Virus record (IMG/VR): IMGVR_UViG_3300042923_000569 | Location: 1 to 64,000 of that record | Length of the DNA: 64,000 nt | Strand: one strand, 5' to 3' | Shown: positions 23,434-57,479 of the stretch, in pieces | How the letters are laid out: every line of letters begins with the position of its first letter | How positions within the stretch are numbered: the stretch's first letter is position 1 | Made by a program: the position numbers and the translations under genes | Notes under the pieces: model-generated | Told to the model about the DNA's origin: nothing | The model's input: the letters and a program-made list of their open reading frames with translations, nothing else | The model's database searches: none

Positions 23434-24350
23434 TAACGACCTCTCATACGTGAACAGAAGTCGATGATTTGTGAAAGTACTTCATCAGCATTATGCATAC
23501 CTTCGTTACCTTCAACTGATTCTTCACCAGAGGTATTCTCTTCACCTTCAATATCACCAATAGCCTGTGCCAGTTGGCCCATACTTGGTTGTTCATGAGT
23601 TAGTGGTGAACTTGTTTGTTCAACATGTGCAACATCAGGTGGTGCCATAACATCTTCAGAATCATTTTCTTCATATTCAGCTTCTTGAACAGGCTGAACA
23701 TCATCTAAACCAAAAACACTTAGTTGGTTTGATTGATTAGGATCTTTAGTTACTACTAAGGTTTGGTCAGTAGTAGGGCCAACGTCCACACCAACAACTG
23801 GTTCAATATCAGTTGAACCTGTAGAATTACCAGGGACAGTAACTTTAAAGTTCTGATTATTAGCATTTTGCTGTAGTTGAGTTTGTTTTAACTTAGCAGC
23901 AGTTTGTGGATTGATTTGTGTTTGTTGGGTATTAGTATTCTTTTGATTAATCTGATTAGCAGATAAAGTACTTGCTAAATCTTCATTAAGTTCATCAAAA
24001 ACTAAAGTTTTAATTTCAGCTAATGTTAGATGAGAATTTTCACGCAATGCAAAAGTACAATGCTGCTTGAAGAAACGTTCTAATTCATTTACTGATAGTT
24101 TATTCAAAGAACTTACTTCAGCAGATTCATTAATCTTAGTATTTGTGAACAACTTATAACTCTCACTCATACGTGCTTTGTACTTTTGAAGTACTTGCAT
24201 AATAGCTCGGTTATCAGAGTTATCCATTGCTTGATTGATTTCGACGAAATCACCAGCATCCATAGAATTTAGTGCCTGGTTTACATCCATCTGTAAACCG
24301 TTTGCATCAGCAAATTTTTGCAATTCCTGTGCAGTTTGTTGTATATCCAT
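23433..24350 (-). CDS. Hypothetical Q/N-rich, probable head-associated protein
   Basis: MSES/INES/LNED motifs, low complexity. Confidence 0.6.
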   Translation of the reverse strand: MDIQQTAQELQKFADANGLQMDVNQALNSMDAGDFVEINQAMDNSDNRAIMQVLQKYKARMSESYKLFTNTKINESAEVSSLNKLSVNELERFFKQHCTFALRENSHLTLAEIKTLVFDELNEDLASTLSANQINQKNTNTQQTQINPQTAAKLKQTQLQQNANNQNFKVTVPGNSTGSTDIEPVVGVDVGPTTDQTLVVTKDPNQSNQLSVFGLDDVQPVQEAEYEENDSEDVMAPPDVAHVEQTSSPLTHEQPSMGQLAQAIGDIEGEENTSGEESVEGNEGMHNADEVLSQIIDFCSRMRGR

Positions 24351-24395: not shown

Positions 24396-24794
24396 TCATG
24401 TACGGGAAAAGGTTTGCTTTGTGATGCTGATATTTCGCTCGGTTGTCGTATTATTAAATTTAGTTAGTCTAGTTCCATTAACTTCGGTAGGAAGAACTAA
24501 TGGAACACCCATAACTTTAATATCAACATTCATTGGCAGTGCAAATTTAAAAGTACTAACAACACATTCTCCCCACACTGACGGAAGATTGTAAAATGAT
24601 GAATTGTTGTTCTTACTTAAGTCAACCTCAGTTCGAACAACACTTACCATCATTGGTCTATCGAATTCCATAACACATTCAATTAGTCTAGACAGATTCA
24701 TTGCACCGGTAAACGTACCATCCACGATAGGAGGTGTTAGTCCATCACCAATATCAACTACTGTGTTGATCGTATAAAATGTATAGGAAATCAT
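24396..24794 (-). CDS. Hypothetical protein (start moved to MISYTF)
   Basis: The track start at 24839 lies inside the 54-aa upstream gene; ATG 24794 follows its stop with SD AAGGA. Confidence 0.55.
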   Translation of the reverse strand: MISYTFYTINTVVDIGDGLTPPIVDGTFTGAMNLSRLIECVMEFDRPMMVSVVRTEVDLSKNNNSSFYNLPSVWGECVVSTFKFALPMNVDIKVMGVPLVLPTEVNGTRLTKFNNTTTERNISITKQTFSRT

Positions 24795-24795
24795 G

Positions 24796-24960
24796 TTAGT
24801 CCTTTTTCTTAGATGTTTGCTTGTATTCTTTATATCCAAAGAAATTAGATTTAGGTAAACGTGTTACTAATGGAAAATGTAATCCAGAACTAACAGACGC
24901 AATACCACCAGCACTCGTTGCACCGGCTGATGCATTTTCATCAATCTTTTTATTTTTCAT
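24796..24960 (-). CDS. Unannotated 54-aa protein resembling the mature major-capsid N-terminus
   Basis: MKNKKIDENASAGATSAGGIASVSSGLHFPLVTRLPKSNFFGYKEYKQTSKKKD; fills the gap exactly. Confidence 0.8.
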   Translation of the reverse strand: MKNKKIDENASAGATSAGGIASVSSGLHFPLVTRLPKSNFFGYKEYKQTSKKKD

Positions 24961-24961
24961 A

Positions 24962-25231
24962 TTAATTACCTTTGTTCTTACGTTTATCTGTTAGGGCTAT
25001 GTTTTCAAGACCCTTTTCGAATTTACGATAGTCCCGGTTCTTAATACTCAAATAAAGACGCCGGGTTAAATCCTCAGCATCTTCTTCATCAAATTCTTCT
25101 TCAATACTGTCAAGAAGATTAATAATCGAATTTATTGCATGATCTGCACGATTACCAATGCTCTGTAACTTATCTTTATCGTTAGTATAGTTCATTATAC
25201 TATCTAAAAAATTGTGCTTGTTTTTTGACAT
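24962..25231 (-). CDS. Hypothetical helical protein (89 aa)
   Basis: Tight operon packing. Confidence 0.6.
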   Translation of the reverse strand: MSKNKHNFLDSIMNYTNDKDKLQSIGNRADHAINSIINLLDSIEEEFDEEDAEDLTRRLYLSIKNRDYRKFEKGLENIALTDKRKNKGN

Positions 25232-25233
25232 AA

Positions 25234-26724
25234 TTACGTCCTACCATTCAAAAAGTTTCGCATACTGGAAACCTTGTCTTGAGCCTTTGGTGTATTTATG
25301 TCTGTCGAATCAGTACTGGTCAAATTTTGAGTAACCGGTTTTTTGGTTACTTGGGTAAGCTTATTTGATAATGCACCCAATGCAGATTGTCCTGGTAGTG
25401 TAGGAGTTGCCATTACGCCACCTTTACCAACACGACCTTTACCACTATGTTTGAATTTGGAGTTAATTTCCATTTCTTGAATAGTTTGTGGATGGTCTAG
25501 TACTCGCAATGAATCAATATCATAAGACATTACAAGTTTAGAACCTACTGCGGAGCTGTTACGTGTTTTCTGGAAGTCAAATACCATTTCACCACGTTCT
25601 TTACGTGCATCGATGTAAATTACGTTATCTGCGGTATAGATTTTGGAAATACCACCTGCGATCTGTGCTTGGCTCTTAACATCTTCACCACTAACACCAG
25701 AACGGTTGAACTGACATGCTGTAAAGACGGTTAAATCCATTTTCATAGCAAGAGCACGTAATTCTTCAGATACAAACTTATCTTTTACAAACGCATTTGA
25801 TTTATCATTGGGTCCACAACGGTCAGAAGTTAATAGATCAAGGTAATCGACACAAACATAATCAAGTTTTACACCAGTTTTAATCTGTAGTTCACGAATA
25901 TAACTTTCAATGTCATTAACAGTACTGACTGATTCTGGTAAACGGTGAATACGTAGCTTACCGTTTGTTTTTTCTTCAATTTTAACTTTTGCAGCAGTTT
26001 CGCTAATATCAACCTTAACACGACCCTGAGCAGTATCAACCATCATACCGTAGATACGTACTGCTACTAGTTCTTTAGCAAGTTCTAGTGAGATATAGGC
26101 ACCATTAAGACCAGCTTTACTGAAGTTTACTGCTAAGTTTTGTAGTACTACTGATTTACCACCACCTGATGCAGCAGCGAAGATTTCTAACTCCTGACGA
26201 CCAAAACCACCGAACAATTTATAGTCCAATGTTTCCCAGCCAGATTTGAAACTGCCTTGCATATCAGCTAGAGAGCTAATTACTTCTTCTGGATTTTCAT
26301 AAATGTCCAAACCTAAATCATTTTGGACTGTTACAAGCATAGCTTCACGAATAAGTTCTTCGATTCCACCGTAACGCTTTTGGTTAACGAGTTCCATTCC
26401 TTGCTGAATTGCTAAAGCAAGTGCTTTATGACGACAAAATTCACCAACACTATCAAGTACTGCTTGTTGATTTAATTCCTGTACTGGCGTTTCAGTATAA
26501 ACACCATCAGCGTTATGTTTAATGTCATTAAGCGTAGGAGCCACGTTGTACTTTGTTGAATAATCATGTACATATTGAATACTTGGTGCGAATTCCTTAT
26601 CAAAGTATTCAGGCTTTAGGACATTCTTGCACCGAACATATAGATCCGGTGTACTAAAAATCTGTGATAGAAGATATAGTTGATATTGAATGTCGTATTT
26701 TCTTACGTCCGTGTTAGTTGCCAT
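25234..26724 (-). CDS. gp41: DnaB-like replicative helicase
   Basis: AASGGGKS, YISLEL, CVDYLDL, TACQFNR, AGGISKIYTAD, KTRNS. Confidence 0.93.
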   Translation of the reverse strand: MATNTDVRKYDIQYQLYLLSQIFSTPDLYVRCKNVLKPEYFDKEFAPSIQYVHDYSTKYNVAPTLNDIKHNADGVYTETPVQELNQQAVLDSVGEFCRHKALALAIQQGMELVNQKRYGGIEELIREAMLVTVQNDLGLDIYENPEEVISSLADMQGSFKSGWETLDYKLFGGFGRQELEIFAAASGGGKSVVLQNLAVNFSKAGLNGAYISLELAKELVAVRIYGMMVDTAQGRVKVDISETAAKVKIEEKTNGKLRIHRLPESVSTVNDIESYIRELQIKTGVKLDYVCVDYLDLLTSDRCGPNDKSNAFVKDKFVSEELRALAMKMDLTVFTACQFNRSGVSGEDVKSQAQIAGGISKIYTADNVIYIDARKERGEMVFDFQKTRNSSAVGSKLVMSYDIDSLRVLDHPQTIQEMEINSKFKHSGKGRVGKGGVMATPTLPGQSALGALSNKLTQVTKKPVTQNLTSTDSTDINTPKAQDKVSSMRNFLNGRT

Positions 26725-53476: not shown

Positions 53477-53788
53477 TTAGTCTGTCTCTTCTTCTAAATC
53501 ATCAAATACTGTATCTATCATATTAGCAGCAAGTTTCTTTGGCATTTTATACCATTCTTTTCCTGCACCTTGAGTTGCATTCATAAGCTTCAAGCGTTTA
53601 TTAACTTCTTTTTCGGCGGCTTTAGCATCTTCAAAATACACTTCATGATAGACTTCATAGTCTCTAAACGGAGAACCTGTCTGATAAGTACTTAGACGTG
53701 TTTTCATTTCTTCTTTTGATGTAAATCCAATCTTAACCCATTCAGGCCATGCTTGGTTTACGATTACATAACAGATCTGATTAGACAT
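53477..53788 (-). CDS. T5orf172/GIY-YIG superfamily protein
   Basis: CYVI......VKIGFT......RL..YQTGSP..Y, AEK, KEW. Confidence 0.8.
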   Translation of the reverse strand: MSNQICYVIVNQAWPEWVKIGFTSKEEMKTRLSTYQTGSPFRDYEVYHEVYFEDAKAAEKEVNKRLKLMNATQGAGKEWYKMPKKLAANMIDTVFDDLEEETD

Positions 53789-54404: not shown

Positions 54405-55580
54405 TTACATGAAGGTTACGTTGCGGATAGCAATTTTGCTGTAGTAGTCAGCAGCGTTACCTAGTGATGAAGTACTGTCAGTTAGCTGTACATAACCATA
54501 ACGAGTTAGGAAGCTAGTAACTAGTTCACCAGTGTTAGGGTCCATTACAGTACCAGAAGCCATCAATGGGATGTAAGGGCAGTAGAATGCACCAGCATCA
54601 GTTTCTTGATTACCTTTATAACCGATTAGTACATCAGTACTGTCATCAGCATAGGTATCAACATAAACACGCATTGTTGAGTTTAGAACACCAACGAATT
54701 TAACGTTAGTTGGAGCTTCGAAAGTACCTTCAGTAGTACGTGCAAAACTAGAAGTAGTTGCAGACTGTAGAATGGTTAGAGCAGTTGGAGAAACAACAGC
54801 CCAATTCGCTGCACCACGTTTGGTACGACGAGCAACTTCGTTAGCTTGACGGTTGATTAGAGTAGCTAGAGCAGCGTGTTCATCACCAACGAAGGTAGCA
54901 ACACCGGTAACTTTAGACTGATCGTAAACAACAGCAGCAGCACCTGGAAGTGCACGTAGACGAGCTAGCAATTCTTGGTCGATTTCAGTAGTGATTTCTT
55001 GTGCGATAGCAGCCATTAGTTCAGCTTCAACGTCAATACCGTGTTGTGCTTGTGCATCTTGTGCAGATTCAACAGTCCAACGAGCAGATAGACGACGAGA
55101 TTGAGCTTCTACGGTTTCACGTAGAATACGGATGTTAACACGACGACCCATAACACCTTCTAGTTGAGAAGTAGGTGCAGCACGTGGTGCAGTGTTATCA
55201 GAGTTTACTTCACCAGTGTAAGACTTAGCGATTTTGTAAGGTGATAGAGCTTCTTCACCAGCAACAACGCCTGGAGCGTTATCAGCATATTGAACACGTA
55301 GTGTATGAATCTGACCAACTGGACCAGTCATAGGTTGAACACCAATAATTTCGTTAGCAATAACGGTTGGCATAACACGACGGATAATTGGTAGAATTAC
55401 TTTGTTTAGTGTAGCGATGTTACCAGCAGAAGTTGCACCAGCAGTTGCAGATTCGCGTAGCATTACTTTACGTTGGTTATCTAGAACTGATTCCATTACA
55501 GTTTTACGATTACCACTTAGACCTTCAACAAGCTTATCCTTTACAGCAGCCCATTTAGATTCAGTTAATAGTTGTGACAT
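54405..55580 (-). CDS. gp23: Major capsid protein (start moved to MSQLLTES)
   Basis: IRRVMP..IA..IIGVQPMTGP, A.SRRL.A.W..E..QD, EI..EID, FYCPYIP, TRYG; extreme codon bias. Confidence 0.96.
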   Translation of the reverse strand: MSQLLTESKWAAVKDKLVEGLSGNRKTVMESVLDNQRKVMLRESATAGATSAGNIATLNKVILPIIRRVMPTVIANEIIGVQPMTGPVGQIHTLRVQYADNAPGVVAGEEALSPYKIAKSYTGEVNSDNTAPRAAPTSQLEGVMGRRVNIRILRETVEAQSRRLSARWTVESAQDAQAQHGIDVEAELMAAIAQEITTEIDQELLARLRALPGAAAVVYDQSKVTGVATFVGDEHAALATLINRQANEVARRTKRGAANWAVVSPTALTILQSATTSSFARTTEGTFEAPTNVKFVGVLNSTMRVYVDTYADDSTDVLIGYKGNQETDAGAFYCPYIPLMASGTVMDPNTGELVTSFLTRYGYVQLTDSTSSLGNAADYYSKIAIRNVTFM

Positions 55581-55656: not shown

Positions 55657-56778
55657 TTAACGATTTTTATCCATTCCTGATAATTTAGTAATTTCGTTTA
55701 GGAAATCTAAGTCATCAGAAGATAGCTCATCATTTTTAATGATACTTTCACGGTTTCCAGTTACTACTTTACCTTCCGTTAGAGCATTTTTAGCCTTATT
55801 ATTAACTGCTGGACGGCTAGGATTAGCAGCAGATTCATTTACAGTACCCTTAAGAACAGATTTGTGGTACTTGCTGAAATTTTCTTTTAGCTTCTCGGTT
55901 GGAGATGTTGCTAGTAGAGATTCCATAATTTGTTTTTGTTGAATAGTAAGTGGCTTAGTTAGTTCAGAGATGATTGCAGAACGTGCTGCGTTATCTTCCA
56001 TAATACGAACTTTACGTTTAGCATTTTCAGCTTCTTTACGAGCTTCGCTTAAAGCTACTTTCGCAGAGATTGCTTCTTCTTCAGCTTCTTTAACAGATTC
56101 ATTAAGCTCACGTAGAATAGAACTTTCGTTATATTGTTTGCTGTAGAATTCATTTGAGAATGCTTCGAAAATCTTACGACCGAACATGTTTTGTTTTGCT
56201 TCTAGTAGATCAACTTTAAGAGCATTTAAGTTCTTTTCGGTAGTCTCAGCAATATAAGTCGCTGCGGTTTCAGCAGTACGCTTAATAAAGTTTGCACGTG
56301 CTTCCGCAATTTGCTTACTTCCTTCTGCAATCAACTTAACGCGAGTTTCAACTAGTTCACGTTTTTCTTGATGGAAATCTTTAAGTTCTTCTGCTAGGAC
56401 ACGATTACTGAATCCCATGAATTTACTTAGACTTTCATTAATATGTTTGCGTTCTTGACGCATAGTTTTTACTTCTTCAGCTAGTACTGTGTTAGCGAAG
56501 TCTGAGAAATTACCCAAAGTCTTACGAAGTTTAACGCGGTCTTCTACAAGTTTACGCTTTTCAGCATATACATCTGACATTTGTTCGCTGATTACTTCAG
56601 CCATCATTTTGTCTAGACCTTCTGTTAGTTTCGATAAGTCTTCTTGGTAACGTTCTTTCATTTCTTCACGCATTTCAGCAGCTACGATAGCTTTTTCTTC
56701 ATTCCATGCTTCCTGAATTAGCTTTTTAGCTTCGTCAGAAAGAGATGATTCTTTTAGAAACTGATCCAATTTTGACAT
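55657..56778 (-). CDS. Prohead core scaffold protein (gp22-like)
   Basis: Coiled coil, many L/I-x-E sites, located between protease and MCP. Confidence 0.85.
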   Translation of the reverse strand: MSKLDQFLKESSLSDEAKKLIQEAWNEEKAIVAAEMREEMKERYQEDLSKLTEGLDKMMAEVISEQMSDVYAEKRKLVEDRVKLRKTLGNFSDFANTVLAEEVKTMRQERKHINESLSKFMGFSNRVLAEELKDFHQEKRELVETRVKLIAEGSKQIAEARANFIKRTAETAATYIAETTEKNLNALKVDLLEAKQNMFGRKIFEAFSNEFYSKQYNESSILRELNESVKEAEEEAISAKVALSEARKEAENAKRKVRIMEDNAARSAIISELTKPLTIQQKQIMESLLATSPTEKLKENFSKYHKSVLKGTVNESAANPSRPAVNNKAKNALTEGKVVTGNRESIIKNDELSSDDLDFLNEITKLSGMDKNR

Positions 56779-56846: not shown

Positions 56847-57479
56847 TTAACCTTTCAAATTCTTAAAAAATTGATGAATTTCATCATCAATAGTCTGAGA
56901 GGTTCCTTTGGTAGATTCAAACACTCGTTTTGAACCAGTTACAGGTGATCCGTACTTACTATTTAGAGATTCAAATACCGCTTTTGGATATGCATCTGGA
57001 GCACTAGGTTGTGCTACAATATCAATAGTTACGATTTCAAAATCTGATACAATACCGTTATGGTCAACATTACCTGAACCACGTGAACTCACACCCAATT
57101 TAACGCCACTTTCAATCATTGTACGAATATCTTTACCATGAGTGGTATCTAGTAACATAATGGTAGCCATACCATTTGCACCTTCCATCCAAACTTCAGT
57201 AATCATACCCACTACACGATCTAAATTAACAGTTAGTGTTTCAGGGTGGTCACATTCACATAAAATACTTTCGCCACGACGAATCCTTTCAGCCATATTA
57301 TTTACTGCTCTCGCAATTTCAGCGAAAGGATATACGCGTTCGTTCAAGTTTCTACGGTCAGCTTGAATTGCAATACCACGAAGGTAGCAATTCTTACGTC
57401 CAGTAACCTGATCCTCTTTGTACTCTAGTACTATTCTAGAATCATTGAATGAAGACCATTCTCTAATCATATTGCTCAT
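56847..57479 (-). CDS. gp21: Prohead protease
   Basis: N.NERVYP, ECDHP, GVSSRGSG, DIVAQPSAP.AY. Confidence 0.93.
   Translation of the reverse strand: MSNMIREWSSFNDSRIVLEYKEDQVTGRKNCYLRGIAIQADRRNLNERVYPFAEIARAVNNMAERIRRGESILCECDHPETLTVNLDRVVGMITEVWMEGANGMATIMLLDTTHGKDIRTMIESGVKLGVSSRGSGNVDHNGIVSDFEIVTIDIVAQPSAPDAYPKAVFESLNSKYGSPVTGSKRVFESTKGTSQTIDDEIHQFFKNLKG

What the first reader, a model, noticed from the sequence alone, without database searches (positions are those of the whole stretch)
24796..24960. Unannotated 54-aa protein that copies the mature N-terminus of the major capsid protein
After a putative cleavage site it reads IDE|NASAGATSAGGIAS; the MCP reads LRE|SATAGATSAGNIAT (55432-55461 region), about 10 of 15 residues identical. 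It is below the ORF-track cutoff but fills the gap exactly and is translationally coupled on both sides. Inference: a capsid N-arm mimic that fills lattice sites, regulates protease or expansion, or serves as a decoy for capsid-sensing defences (e.g. CapRel-type); the shared motif may also be a head-targeting signal.
Basis: partly seen in the sequence, partly recalled or inferred. Interest (0 to 1): 0.72.

Follow-up and report, generated by a model that had tools for sequence, protein, structure and literature searches.

The report
Capsid N-arm-like small head protein
A real, conserved 54-residue late gene of a Rak2-like jumbo phage encodes a basic peptide that starts with a copy of the protease-cut N-terminal arm of the major capsid protein; it is most likely a processed internal head peptide, but its exact job is untested.

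Summary
ORF 24796-24960 (-) encodes 54 aa. Residues 6-36 are homologous to residues 41-70 of the T4 gp23-type major capsid protein (MCP, 54405-55580 -), including the (I/L)-x-E maturation site at the same aligned position. Support: BLASTP E 2e-5; 0 of 5000 shuffles reach the score; profile-profile E 1e-7 to 2e-9.

It is not a new gene. It is phrog_17311 and is annotated 'hypothetical' in CBB, GAP32, phAPEC6 and others. It is under purifying selection (median dN/dS 0.18). It stays downstream of primase and helicase in distant 311-452 kb phage contigs.

It is the second cistron of a unit behind a T4-type late promoter, between two genes whose CBB homologues are virion proteins by MS.

Distant relatives carry T4 capsid-targeting-like leaders. 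In others the same module is the C-terminal piece of 150-830 aa proteins, again after L-x-E.

Best reading (about 0.5): a small basic internal-protein-like head peptide. It is loaded into the prohead, cut by the gp21-type protease after Glu8, and shares the MCP's scaffold-contact/N-arm segment.

Virion presence, cleavage and function are unproven. The decoy idea has no support.

The parts
24796..24960 (-). Small gene: 54 codons plus TAA. Member of phrog_17311; orthologue of CBB_293 and GAP32_288.
   Evidence: (E 1.4e-31, full length). Median dN/dS 0.18 across 10 sequences.
24937..24960 (-). Leader, residues 1-8 (MKNKKIDE), ending in I-x-E. This is the predicted cut site of the gp21-type prohead protease, after Glu8.
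   Evidence: (L/I/V)-x-E is invariant in the 20 homologues of A2, in 8 paired relatives and in distant modules. It aligns with the MCP's L41-R42-E43. Cleavage itself is inferred.
24853..24936 (-). MCP-like segment, residues 9-36 (NASAGATSAGGIASV...FPLVTRLP). It aligns with MCP residues 44-70.
24799..24852 (-). Residues 37-54: conserved (K/P)(S/T)NFFGYKEYK followed by a Lys-rich tail. The predicted mature peptide 9-54 is 4.8 kDa with pI 10.
25293..25299 (-). T4-type late-promoter core ATAAATA, 62 nt upstream of the 89-aa ORF and inside the 3' end of the helicase gene. Likely start of the 89-54-132 aa late unit.
   Evidence: 14 of 16 minus-strand copies in the window lie 26-94 nt upstream of gene starts, including the MCP and scaffold genes; 1.7 expected at random. 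It reads TATAAATA at the same place in CBB, GAP32, Kaldavass, fHe-Yen9-04 and Munch. ATAAATA was proposed as the late motif in CBB (PMC5259590). It lies in coding sequence, so its conservation is partly confounded.
24962..25231 (-). Upstream 89-aa gene (phrog_11854). Its CBB homologue CBB_292 was found in virions by MS.
24396..24794 (-). Downstream 132-aa gene (phrog_14976). Its CBB homologue CBB_294 was found in virions by MS (4 peptides, 33% coverage).
54405..55580 (-). Major capsid protein gene, 391 aa, Pfam Gp23 (PF07068). It is the only Gp23-family gene in the genome.
55452..55460 (-). MCP codons 41-43 (L-R-E), the predicted maturation cleavage site.
   Evidence: L41 and E43 are invariant in 19 MCPs. 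The predicted mature mass is about 37.2 kDa; the 121Q MCP runs at 37 kDa against 42.2 kDa predicted (PMC5646251).
55368..55451 (-). MCP residues 44-71 (SATAGATSAGNIATLNKVILPIIRRVMP), the segment copied in the small protein. MCP residues 46-71 align with T4 gp23 residues 80-104.
   Evidence: HMMER alignment to T4 gp23* chains; for the T4 structural role.
56847..57479 (-). Prohead protease, Peptidase_S77 (T4 gp21 family).
55657..56778 (-). Scaffold-position gene (373 aa, phrog_10922) between the protease and the MCP, with ATAAATA 50 nt upstream.
   Evidence: phAPEC6 gp226c is annotated as scaffolding protein.

Best explanation
The ORF encodes a small, basic, internal-protein-like component of the phage head.

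Proposed pathway:
1. It is transcribed late, from a T4-type late promoter embedded in the end of the helicase gene, as the second of three tightly coupled cistrons.
2. The 54-aa precursor enters the assembling prohead.
3. The gp21-type (Peptidase_S77) prohead protease cuts it after Glu8, at an (I/L/V)-x-E site. This is the same aligned position at which the MCP loses its 43-residue propeptide.
4. The product is a 46-aa peptide of pI 10.

The first 28 residues of that peptide are a paralogous copy of the MCP's N-terminal region. In T4 gp23 this region lies inside the unexpanded shell against the scaffolding core, and it later becomes the N-arm. It is followed by a conserved FFGY motif and a Lys-rich tail.

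I infer that the MCP-like segment gives the peptide the same contact that the MCP N-terminus makes in the prohead, at the shell/core interface. I also infer that the basic tail holds it to the acidic core proteins and then to the DNA.

Shown: the homology, the conservation, the site motif, the late-promoter context and the virion-protein neighbours. Inferred: encapsidation, cleavage, the binding partner, and retention in the mature head.
For: (1) It is a real gene.
- phrog_17311 over its full length.
- tblastn matches in 73 phage records of the Rak2-like group.
- Median dN/dS 0.18 with dS near saturation.
- It survives an extra gene inserted in RaK2 and K64-1.

(2) It is homologous to the MCP N-terminus, cut site included.

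(3) The maturation machinery is of the T4 type: Peptidase_S77 protease and Gp23 MCP.
- T4 gp21 cuts after Glu, with L/I at P3 (PMC9026906).
- The 121Q MCP is processed from 42.2 to about 37 kDa, matching a cut after E43 here.

(4) Late-unit context and virion-protein neighbours.

(5) Some distant family members carry leaders close to the T4 capsid-targeting sequence MKTYQEFIAE (PMC8442874): MKAHEFIRE, and MRAHEFIWE, MRAFEFITE and MRWYEFITE. Each is directly followed by the module.

(6) In phage contigs of up to 452 kb, the syntenic gene encodes a 603-826 aa protein. It has an N-terminal CTS-like leader (MRYQNLIE in P0042, MKYQERKIKLFE in P0035), and the module sits at its C-terminal end after L-x-E. 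C-terminal processing of a head-packaged protein (Alt) is known in T4.

(7) The mature peptide is basic (pI 10), like the T4 internal proteins, and the neighbouring proteins are acidic.

(8) AF2 finds no independent fold (pLDDT 63), as expected for an arm-like segment that orders only on a partner.
Against: - The peptide was not reported in the virion proteomes of CBB or phAPEC6. These were gel/trypsin workflows in which a 5 kDa peptide is easily lost, so the absence is weak evidence.
- The leader of the Rak2-like proteins (MK-KK-I/V/L-x-E) does not itself resemble the T4 CTS.
- There is no sequence similarity to T4 IPI, IPII or IPIII.
- Small cleavage products of T4 core proteins leave the head, so retention of the peptide is not assured.
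- The promoter motif lies within coding sequence and has one mismatch to TATAAATA in this genome.
- No transcript or ribosome data exist.
Confidence: 0.5

Rival explanations
1. Structural N-arm mimic. After cleavage the peptide is a stoichiometric or site-specific part of the mature T=28 shell. It would occupy grooves that normally take a neighbour's N-arm, for example around pentons or the portal, acting as an internal cement.
For: - The copied segment corresponds to the T4 region that forms the N-arm/N-fist and makes intra- and inter-capsomer contacts after expansion.
- The genome has a single Gp23-family gene and no gp24-like vertex paralogue.
- The 121Q capsid has unassigned density, including density under the fivefold vertices.
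Against: - Every MCP subunit brings its own N-arm, so vacant sites would be few.
- In T4 the N-arm ends up on the outer surface, which a free internal peptide could not easily reach.
- Complex prediction with N-arm-deleted MCP gave no verdict.
- The peptide was not seen in virion proteomes.
Confidence: 0.15
2. Transient assembly regulator. The peptide competes with the MCP N-terminal region for its scaffold/core contact, or for the protease as a look-alike substrate. This would tune shell curvature or size, or the timing of maturation. It is then degraded or lost and is absent from virions.
For: - T4 head-length mutations A94V and G97S lie in the equivalent gp23 segment, which is thought to touch the scaffolding core.
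- The family has so far been found only in contigs of jumbo-phage type.
- Absence from proteomes fits.
Against: - The Lys-rich tail and FFGY motif are conserved but have no role in this model.
- In the fused forms the module is released from large CTS-bearing proteins, which looks more like a packaged product than a soluble competitor.
- There is no direct evidence.
Confidence: 0.15
3. Defence decoy or host-factor binder. The peptide would mimic the part of the capsid protein that host systems or host factors recognise (Gol/Lit with EF-Tu in T4; CapRel-type sensors), blocking or pre-empting them.
For: - The copied segment overlaps the start of the gp23 stretch that corresponds to T4 Gol. The Gol coordinates are from my memory, about residues 93-122. 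The review read gives only '29 residues' and notes that Gol is the most conserved part of gp23.
- T4 internal proteins are known anti-restriction cargo.
Against: - Only about 12 aligned residues overlap that stretch, and the conserved core that follows (IANEIIGVQPM in this MCP) is absent from the peptide.
- The conserved protease site and late expression are not needed for a cytoplasmic decoy.
- The family is conserved across phages of many hosts with little diversification, unlike typical counter-defence genes.
Confidence: 0.05
4. Chance resemblance of an Ala/Gly/Ser/Thr-rich stretch, or a non-functional ORF.
For: The shared core is of low complexity. The library-wide HMM search did not retrieve MCPs at E of 0.001 or better.
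Against: - Shuffle test 0 of 5000.
- hhalign E 1e-7 to 2e-9 with two independent sets of sequences.
- The cut site is at the same aligned position in both families.
- Purifying selection.
- Deep synteny.
Confidence: 0.02

Closest known systems
[quoted passage not shown]
   Same: - Small basic proteins with a short N-terminal propeptide ending (L/I)-x-E.
- The propeptide is removed by the gp21-family prohead protease inside the prohead.
- T4-related phages carry varied CTS-bearing basic proteins.
- Distant members of this family have near-T4 CTS leaders.
   Different: - No sequence similarity to IPI-III.
- The Rak2-like leader is Lys-rich and not CTS-like.
- The mature part is a copy of the MCP N-terminus, which no T4 internal protein has.
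- The gene is strongly conserved, whereas IP genes are poorly conserved among T4 relatives.
- Encapsidation has not been shown.
N-terminal region of T4 gp23 (residues 66-105: scaffold-contact segment, later the N-arm/N-fist)
   Same: Homologous sequence: MCP 46-71 aligns with gp23 80-104, and the small protein aligns with that MCP segment. A protease cut precedes it.
   Different: The small protein has no HK97-fold body and gives no Pfam Gp23 hit. It carries a Lys-rich tail instead. In T4 the cut lies about 14 residues further upstream of the motif.
C-terminal processing of T4 Alt, and polyprotein-like head proteins of giant phages (phiKZ, SPN3US)
   Same: The fused forms (P0035, P0042, P0046) look like head proteins trimmed at both ends after Glu.
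   Different: This applies to the distant relatives, not to the 54-aa gene of this window. No MS evidence exists.
Adenovirus core peptides cut by the viral protease (Mu/pX, pVII; pVIc as protease cofactor). From my own knowledge, not checked here.
   Same: Short basic peptides released inside a capsid by the maturation protease; they bind DNA or the protease.
   Different: Unrelated virus and sequence. This is an analogy only.

Membership tests
phrog_17311 (uncharacterised small proteins of Rak2-like jumbo phages) | Full-length match to the family profile | tested here: met
   E 1.4e-31, residues 1-54 on profile positions 1-54.
T4-type CTS-bearing internal head proteins | Short N-terminal propeptide ending in (L/I/V)-x-E, the gp21 cleavage motif | tested here: met
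   MKNKKIDE in the window. The motif is invariant in all homologues.
T4-type CTS-bearing internal head proteins | A gp21-family prohead protease encoded by the same phage | tested here: met
   PF03420 Peptidase_S77, E 3e-21, at 56847-57479.
T4-type CTS-bearing internal head proteins | Basic mature protein | tested here: met
   Residues 9-54: pI 10.0, 7 K+R against 2 D+E.
T4-type CTS-bearing internal head proteins | Leader resembles the T4 CTS (MKTYQEFIAE) | tested here: not met
   The window's leader is Lys-rich. CTS-like leaders occur only in distant family members.
T4-type CTS-bearing internal head proteins | Physically present in proheads or heads and cleaved there | not testable with these tools
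   Not reported in the CBB or phAPEC6 virion MS. The gel-based methods are poorly suited to a 5 kDa peptide.
Gp23 major capsid protein family (PF07068) | HK97-fold body matching the Pfam model | tested here: not met
   No Pfam hit for the 54-aa protein at E up to 1. Only the N-terminal region is shared.
Capsid cement or decoration proteins | Binds assembled MCP | tested here: inconclusive
   Complex prediction with two copies of MCP 76-391 plus peptide 9-54 gave no verdict.
Gol-like EF-Tu-binding peptide of gp23 | Contains the conserved Gol core of gp23 | tested here: not met
   The alignment ends at the RR-x-x-P position. The following conserved MCP stretch is absent. The Gol residue numbers are from memory.

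The most novel reading that the evidence does not exclude
The module may be a portable, trans-acting copy of the capsid protein's scaffold-contact/N-arm segment, which a large clade of jumbo and mega phages releases inside the prohead by protease cleavage. It would dock at the shell/core interface or under the pentons, where 121Q has unassigned inner density. There it would help set or stabilise the very large T=28 lattice while its Lys tail tethers DNA to the wall. That would be a new class of capsid-protein-derived assembly factor.
Probability: 0.15. Interest if true: 0.8.

Novelty: new variant of a known kind. Interest (0 to 1): 0.55.

Why it matters
Little is known about how T4-type capsid proteins talk to the scaffolding core, and how jumbo phages build T=28 shells with one MCP. 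Here a free-standing paralogue of exactly the MCP segment implicated in scaffold contact and head-size control in T4 is conserved from Rak2-like phages to 450 kb metagenomic phages, together with its protease site. That isolates the segment as an independent module.

This gives a small, genetically tractable handle (a 54-codon gene) for testing three things: what the MCP N-terminal region binds, whether jumbo phages carry T4-like internal peptides, and whether the module can serve as a packaging tag. It also assigns a likely role to a widespread 'hypothetical' PHROG.

Tried and rejected
- Complex prediction (MCP 76-391 x2 plus peptide 9-54, with my own alignments): score 0.00, no verdict. It counts neither for nor against binding.
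- AlphaFold2 of the peptide with a 30-sequence alignment: mean pLDDT 63, pTM 0.20, no fold, so no fold search was made.
- Pfam: no hit.
- ESM Atlas: only unnamed viral clusters.
- PDB profile search: only a marginal match to PsaE (E 0.014), judged to be chance.
- Expression data: no run identified as RNA holds the locus. Laying four runs gave flat, DNA-like contig depth and a single variant in the ORF, 24813 A>G = S50P in the tail.
- tblastn of distant members P0046 and P0041 against isolated phages: no match.
- The MCP could not be searched in the metagenome records behind L020 and L022. The L022 pair was recovered by another route.
- Virion proteomes of CBB and phAPEC6 do not list the protein. 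The fEgEco12 paper has no MS data, and phiKp24 has a different MCP type.
- A genome-wide scan for other short-leader basic ORFs gave mostly spurious frames.

Full report
**What the window is.** The region is about 80% identical in DNA to Rak2-like jumbo myophages: Pectobacterium phage CBB, Cronobacter phage GAP32, Erwinia phage Kaldavass, Serratia phage BF and Yersinia phage fHe-Yen9-04. The genome is a 357,873-bp virus record with terminal repeats. Head morphogenesis is of the T4 type. It has a Peptidase_S77 (gp21-family) protease at 56847-57479, a scaffold-position gene at 55657-56778, and a 391-aa Gp23-family MCP at 54405-55580. No second Gp23-family gene, that is no gp24-like vertex paralogue, is detectable.

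**The observation.**
- The 54-codon ORF lies at 24796-24960 (-). It is packed with one-base spacers between an 89-aa and a 132-aa gene, and has an AAAGGT ribosome-binding site.
- Its residues 8-22 match MCP residues 43-57 at 11 of 15 positions. BLASTP extends this to 13/28 identities, E 2e-5.
- None of 5000 composition-preserving shuffles reached the observed local score (60 against 26.4 +/- 4.1). The MCP is the top hit among all 419 long ORFs of the genome.
- The core motif occurs only in these two genes.
- At family level, the profile of 20 small-protein homologues aligns to a profile of 19 MCPs over 35 columns: hhalign probability 94%, E 1.3e-7. An independent profile of 24 more distant modules does better: 96%, E 1.8e-9.
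- Both alignments place the small protein's I6-D7-E8 on the MCP's L41-R42-E43.
- Five of the eleven shared residues use different codons, so this is conservation at the protein level and not a recent DNA copy.

**It is a real gene, and a known one.**
- It is a full-length member of phrog_17311.
- tblastn finds it in 73 phage records of the group.
- It is annotated 'hypothetical protein' in CBB (CBB_293), GAP32 (GAP32_288), phAPEC6 (gp188c), fHe-Yen9-04 (g286), Munch and others. It is uncalled in RaK2, where an extra 127-aa gene has been inserted just upstream.
- Median pairwise dN/dS is 0.18, with synonymous sites near saturation.
- The whole length is conserved: leader, (L/I/V)-x-E, N-A-S-x-G-A-T-S-A-G-x-I-A-S-V, G-L-x-(F/Y)-P-L-x-x-R-(L/M)-P, N-F-F-G-Y-K-E-Y-K, then a Lys-rich tail.

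**Context.**
- The CBB homologues of both flanking genes were detected in virions by MS: CBB_292 with 1 peptide and CBB_294 with 4 peptides (PMC5259590). CBB_293 itself was not detected, nor was phAPEC6 gp188c. Both studies used gel and trypsin workflows.
- The T4-late-like motif ATAAATA occurs 16 times on the coding (minus) strand of the window. Fourteen copies lie 26-94 nt upstream of a gene start, against 1.7 expected at random. They precede the MCP, the scaffold gene, other virion-protein and tail-fibre genes, the 305-aa gene at 24350 and the 89-aa gene.
- The copy at 25293-25299 lies inside the 3' end of the helicase gene. It reads TATAAATA at the same place in five of seven relatives. 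ATAAATA was proposed as the late promoter in CBB and GAP32.
- The small gene is therefore probably the second cistron of a late 89-54-132 aa unit, even though it sits right behind the primase and helicase genes.

**Wider family.** An HMM search of 1.8 billion representatives found 32 hits at E up to 0.001, four of which are repetitive or very long proteins I judged spurious. Three points stand out.

1. Deep synteny. The order primase, DnaB helicase, 8x-aa gene, module gene recurs in a 311-kb contig. There the small protein P0022 and the MCP P0126, with its S77 protease, sit on the same record, and both keep the motif. It also recurs in contigs of up to 452 kb. tblastn of the 452-kb contig's proteins against this genome maps a collinear block covering about 9 kb of the window (22.5-31.6 kb). 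In that block, residues 542-597 of a 603-aa protein correspond to the 54-aa gene, and the other 540 residues have no counterpart.

2. Fused forms. In these proteins (P0031, P0035, P0038, P0042, P0044, P0046) the module is always C-terminal and always preceded by (L/V)-x-E. P0035 and P0042 also begin with CTS-like leaders (MKYQERKIKLFE, MRYQNLIE). P0035 carries a LysM domain.

3. CTS-like leaders. Several stand-alone members begin MKAHEFIRE, MRAHEFIWE, MRAFEFITE or MRWYEFITE, directly followed by the module. The T4 capsid-targeting sequence is MKTYQEFIAE (PMC8442874). In one contig the module gene sits among other small basic genes with MR-x-x-E leaders.

**What the copied segment does in T4.**
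- HMMER aligns MCP residues 46-71 to gp23 residues 80-104. The numbering is cross-checked by A94, G97 and M98, which are named in PMC9546572.
- That paper reports that gp23* residues 66-105 are disordered in the unexpanded head. They point to the inside and probably contact the scaffolding core. They carry the head-length mutations A94V and G97S, and include Met98, which contacts the portal.
- After expansion this region becomes the external N-arm and N-fist, with extensive intra- and inter-capsomer contacts.
- T4 gp21 cuts after Glu with L/I at P3. It removes 10-19-residue targeting propeptides from internal proteins, and also processes Alt at its C-terminus.
- For the Rak2-like phage 121Q, the MCP runs at about 37 kDa against 42.2 kDa predicted. 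A cut after E43 here predicts about 37.2 kDa.

**Interpretation.** The invariant protease motif sits at the homologous position in both families. It is retained even where the module is internal to a long protein. This argues that release of a free N-terminus just before the A-S-x-G-A-T-S-A-G motif by the prohead protease is part of the module's biology. T4-type proteases act inside assembled proheads, so this places the module in the prohead. The CTS-like leaders, the late promoter, the virion-protein neighbours and the basic charge of the product (pI 10) all fit a T4-internal-protein-like peptide.

What is unusual is that its mature part is a paralogue of the MCP's scaffold-contact/N-arm segment. 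The simplest reason for two paralogues to keep the same 28 residues over this evolutionary depth is a shared partner. In the prohead, that partner would be the core/shell interface. I put about 0.5 on this reading. The main rivals are a lattice-bound N-arm mimic (0.15) and a transient regulator of assembly or maturation (0.15). A defence decoy (0.05) has no positive evidence, and the peptide lacks most of the Gol-equivalent region. Chance is excluded for practical purposes.

**Limits.** There is no evidence of translation, cleavage or virion presence. The only structural tests were uninformative. The promoter motif is in coding sequence. The Gol coordinates and the adenovirus analogy rest on my memory.

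**Novelty.** The gene is known as an uncharacterised PHROG. I found no paper in the searched library that links it to the MCP. I class it as a new variant of a known kind: a T4-type processed internal head protein with a capsid-derived module that also exists as a cleavable C-terminal piece of large proteins.

Noticed in passing
window minus strand: 2382, 7250, 9244, 19447, 24390, 25293, 28851, 39407, 53467, 53814, 55624, 56828, 58371, 58711: ATAAATA (T4-late-like) lies 26-94 nt upstream of 14 gene starts, against 1.7 expected at random. It marks late transcription units, including some embedded among replication genes.
   Followed up: partly
L007:140-523 (RaK2 ORF130), with K64-1 and Muenster at the same place: An extra 127-aa gene (Pfam DUF7487; annotated 'homing endonuclease EDxHD' in K64-1 and Muenster) is inserted between the 89-aa gene and the small gene. 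The small gene survives but is unannotated in RaK2.
   Followed up: partly
whole genome (G000): There is only one Gp23-family gene and no detectable gp24-like vertex paralogue. The pentons are therefore made either of the MCP itself or of an unrecognised protein.
   Followed up: partly
window 53477-53788 (-): A 103-aa ORF two genes downstream of the MCP gene matches T5orf172/MUG113 (GIY-YIG-like) domains. It may be a remnant of a mobile endonuclease.
   Followed up: no
L019:5173-7022: The DnaB-type helicase of a distant relative is split by an intein-like insert (Hom_end_hint) and appears as two ORFs.
   Followed up: no
P0047 (L025:3093-3407) and P0043: One distant member has two tandem copies of the module in 104 aa. 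In another, the module is N-terminal (after MRYKELKE) and is followed by a domain with a ParB-like H-E-G-R-H-R motif.
   Followed up: no
L019:11083-11706, L055:6767-7549, L025:3410-3823: The gene just downstream of the module gene begins with a conserved L-T-G-N-(M/L)-D-F-F-T motif in three distant lineages, even where the helicase is not adjacent. This suggests a conserved gene pair. Its relation to the window's 132-aa virion protein was not tested.
   Followed up: no
P0035, P0044, P0046 (fused modules): After the predicted cut, the released module would start with Tyr or Phe, which are bacterial N-degron residues. A ClpS-like gene sits next to the MCP in the 311-kb relative (L029:2815-3129). 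This may be coincidence.
   Followed up: no
small protein residues 18-43: A marginal profile match to the beta-hairpin of photosystem I subunit PsaE (E 0.014 to 0.03). Probably chance, but it hints at beta-hairpin propensity.
   Followed up: no
genome position about 213037 (-), outside the window: Another 60-aa basic ORF has a short leader ending I-V-E (MAKSKKGVKKLTPIVE). It may be a second internal-protein-like gene.
   Followed up: no
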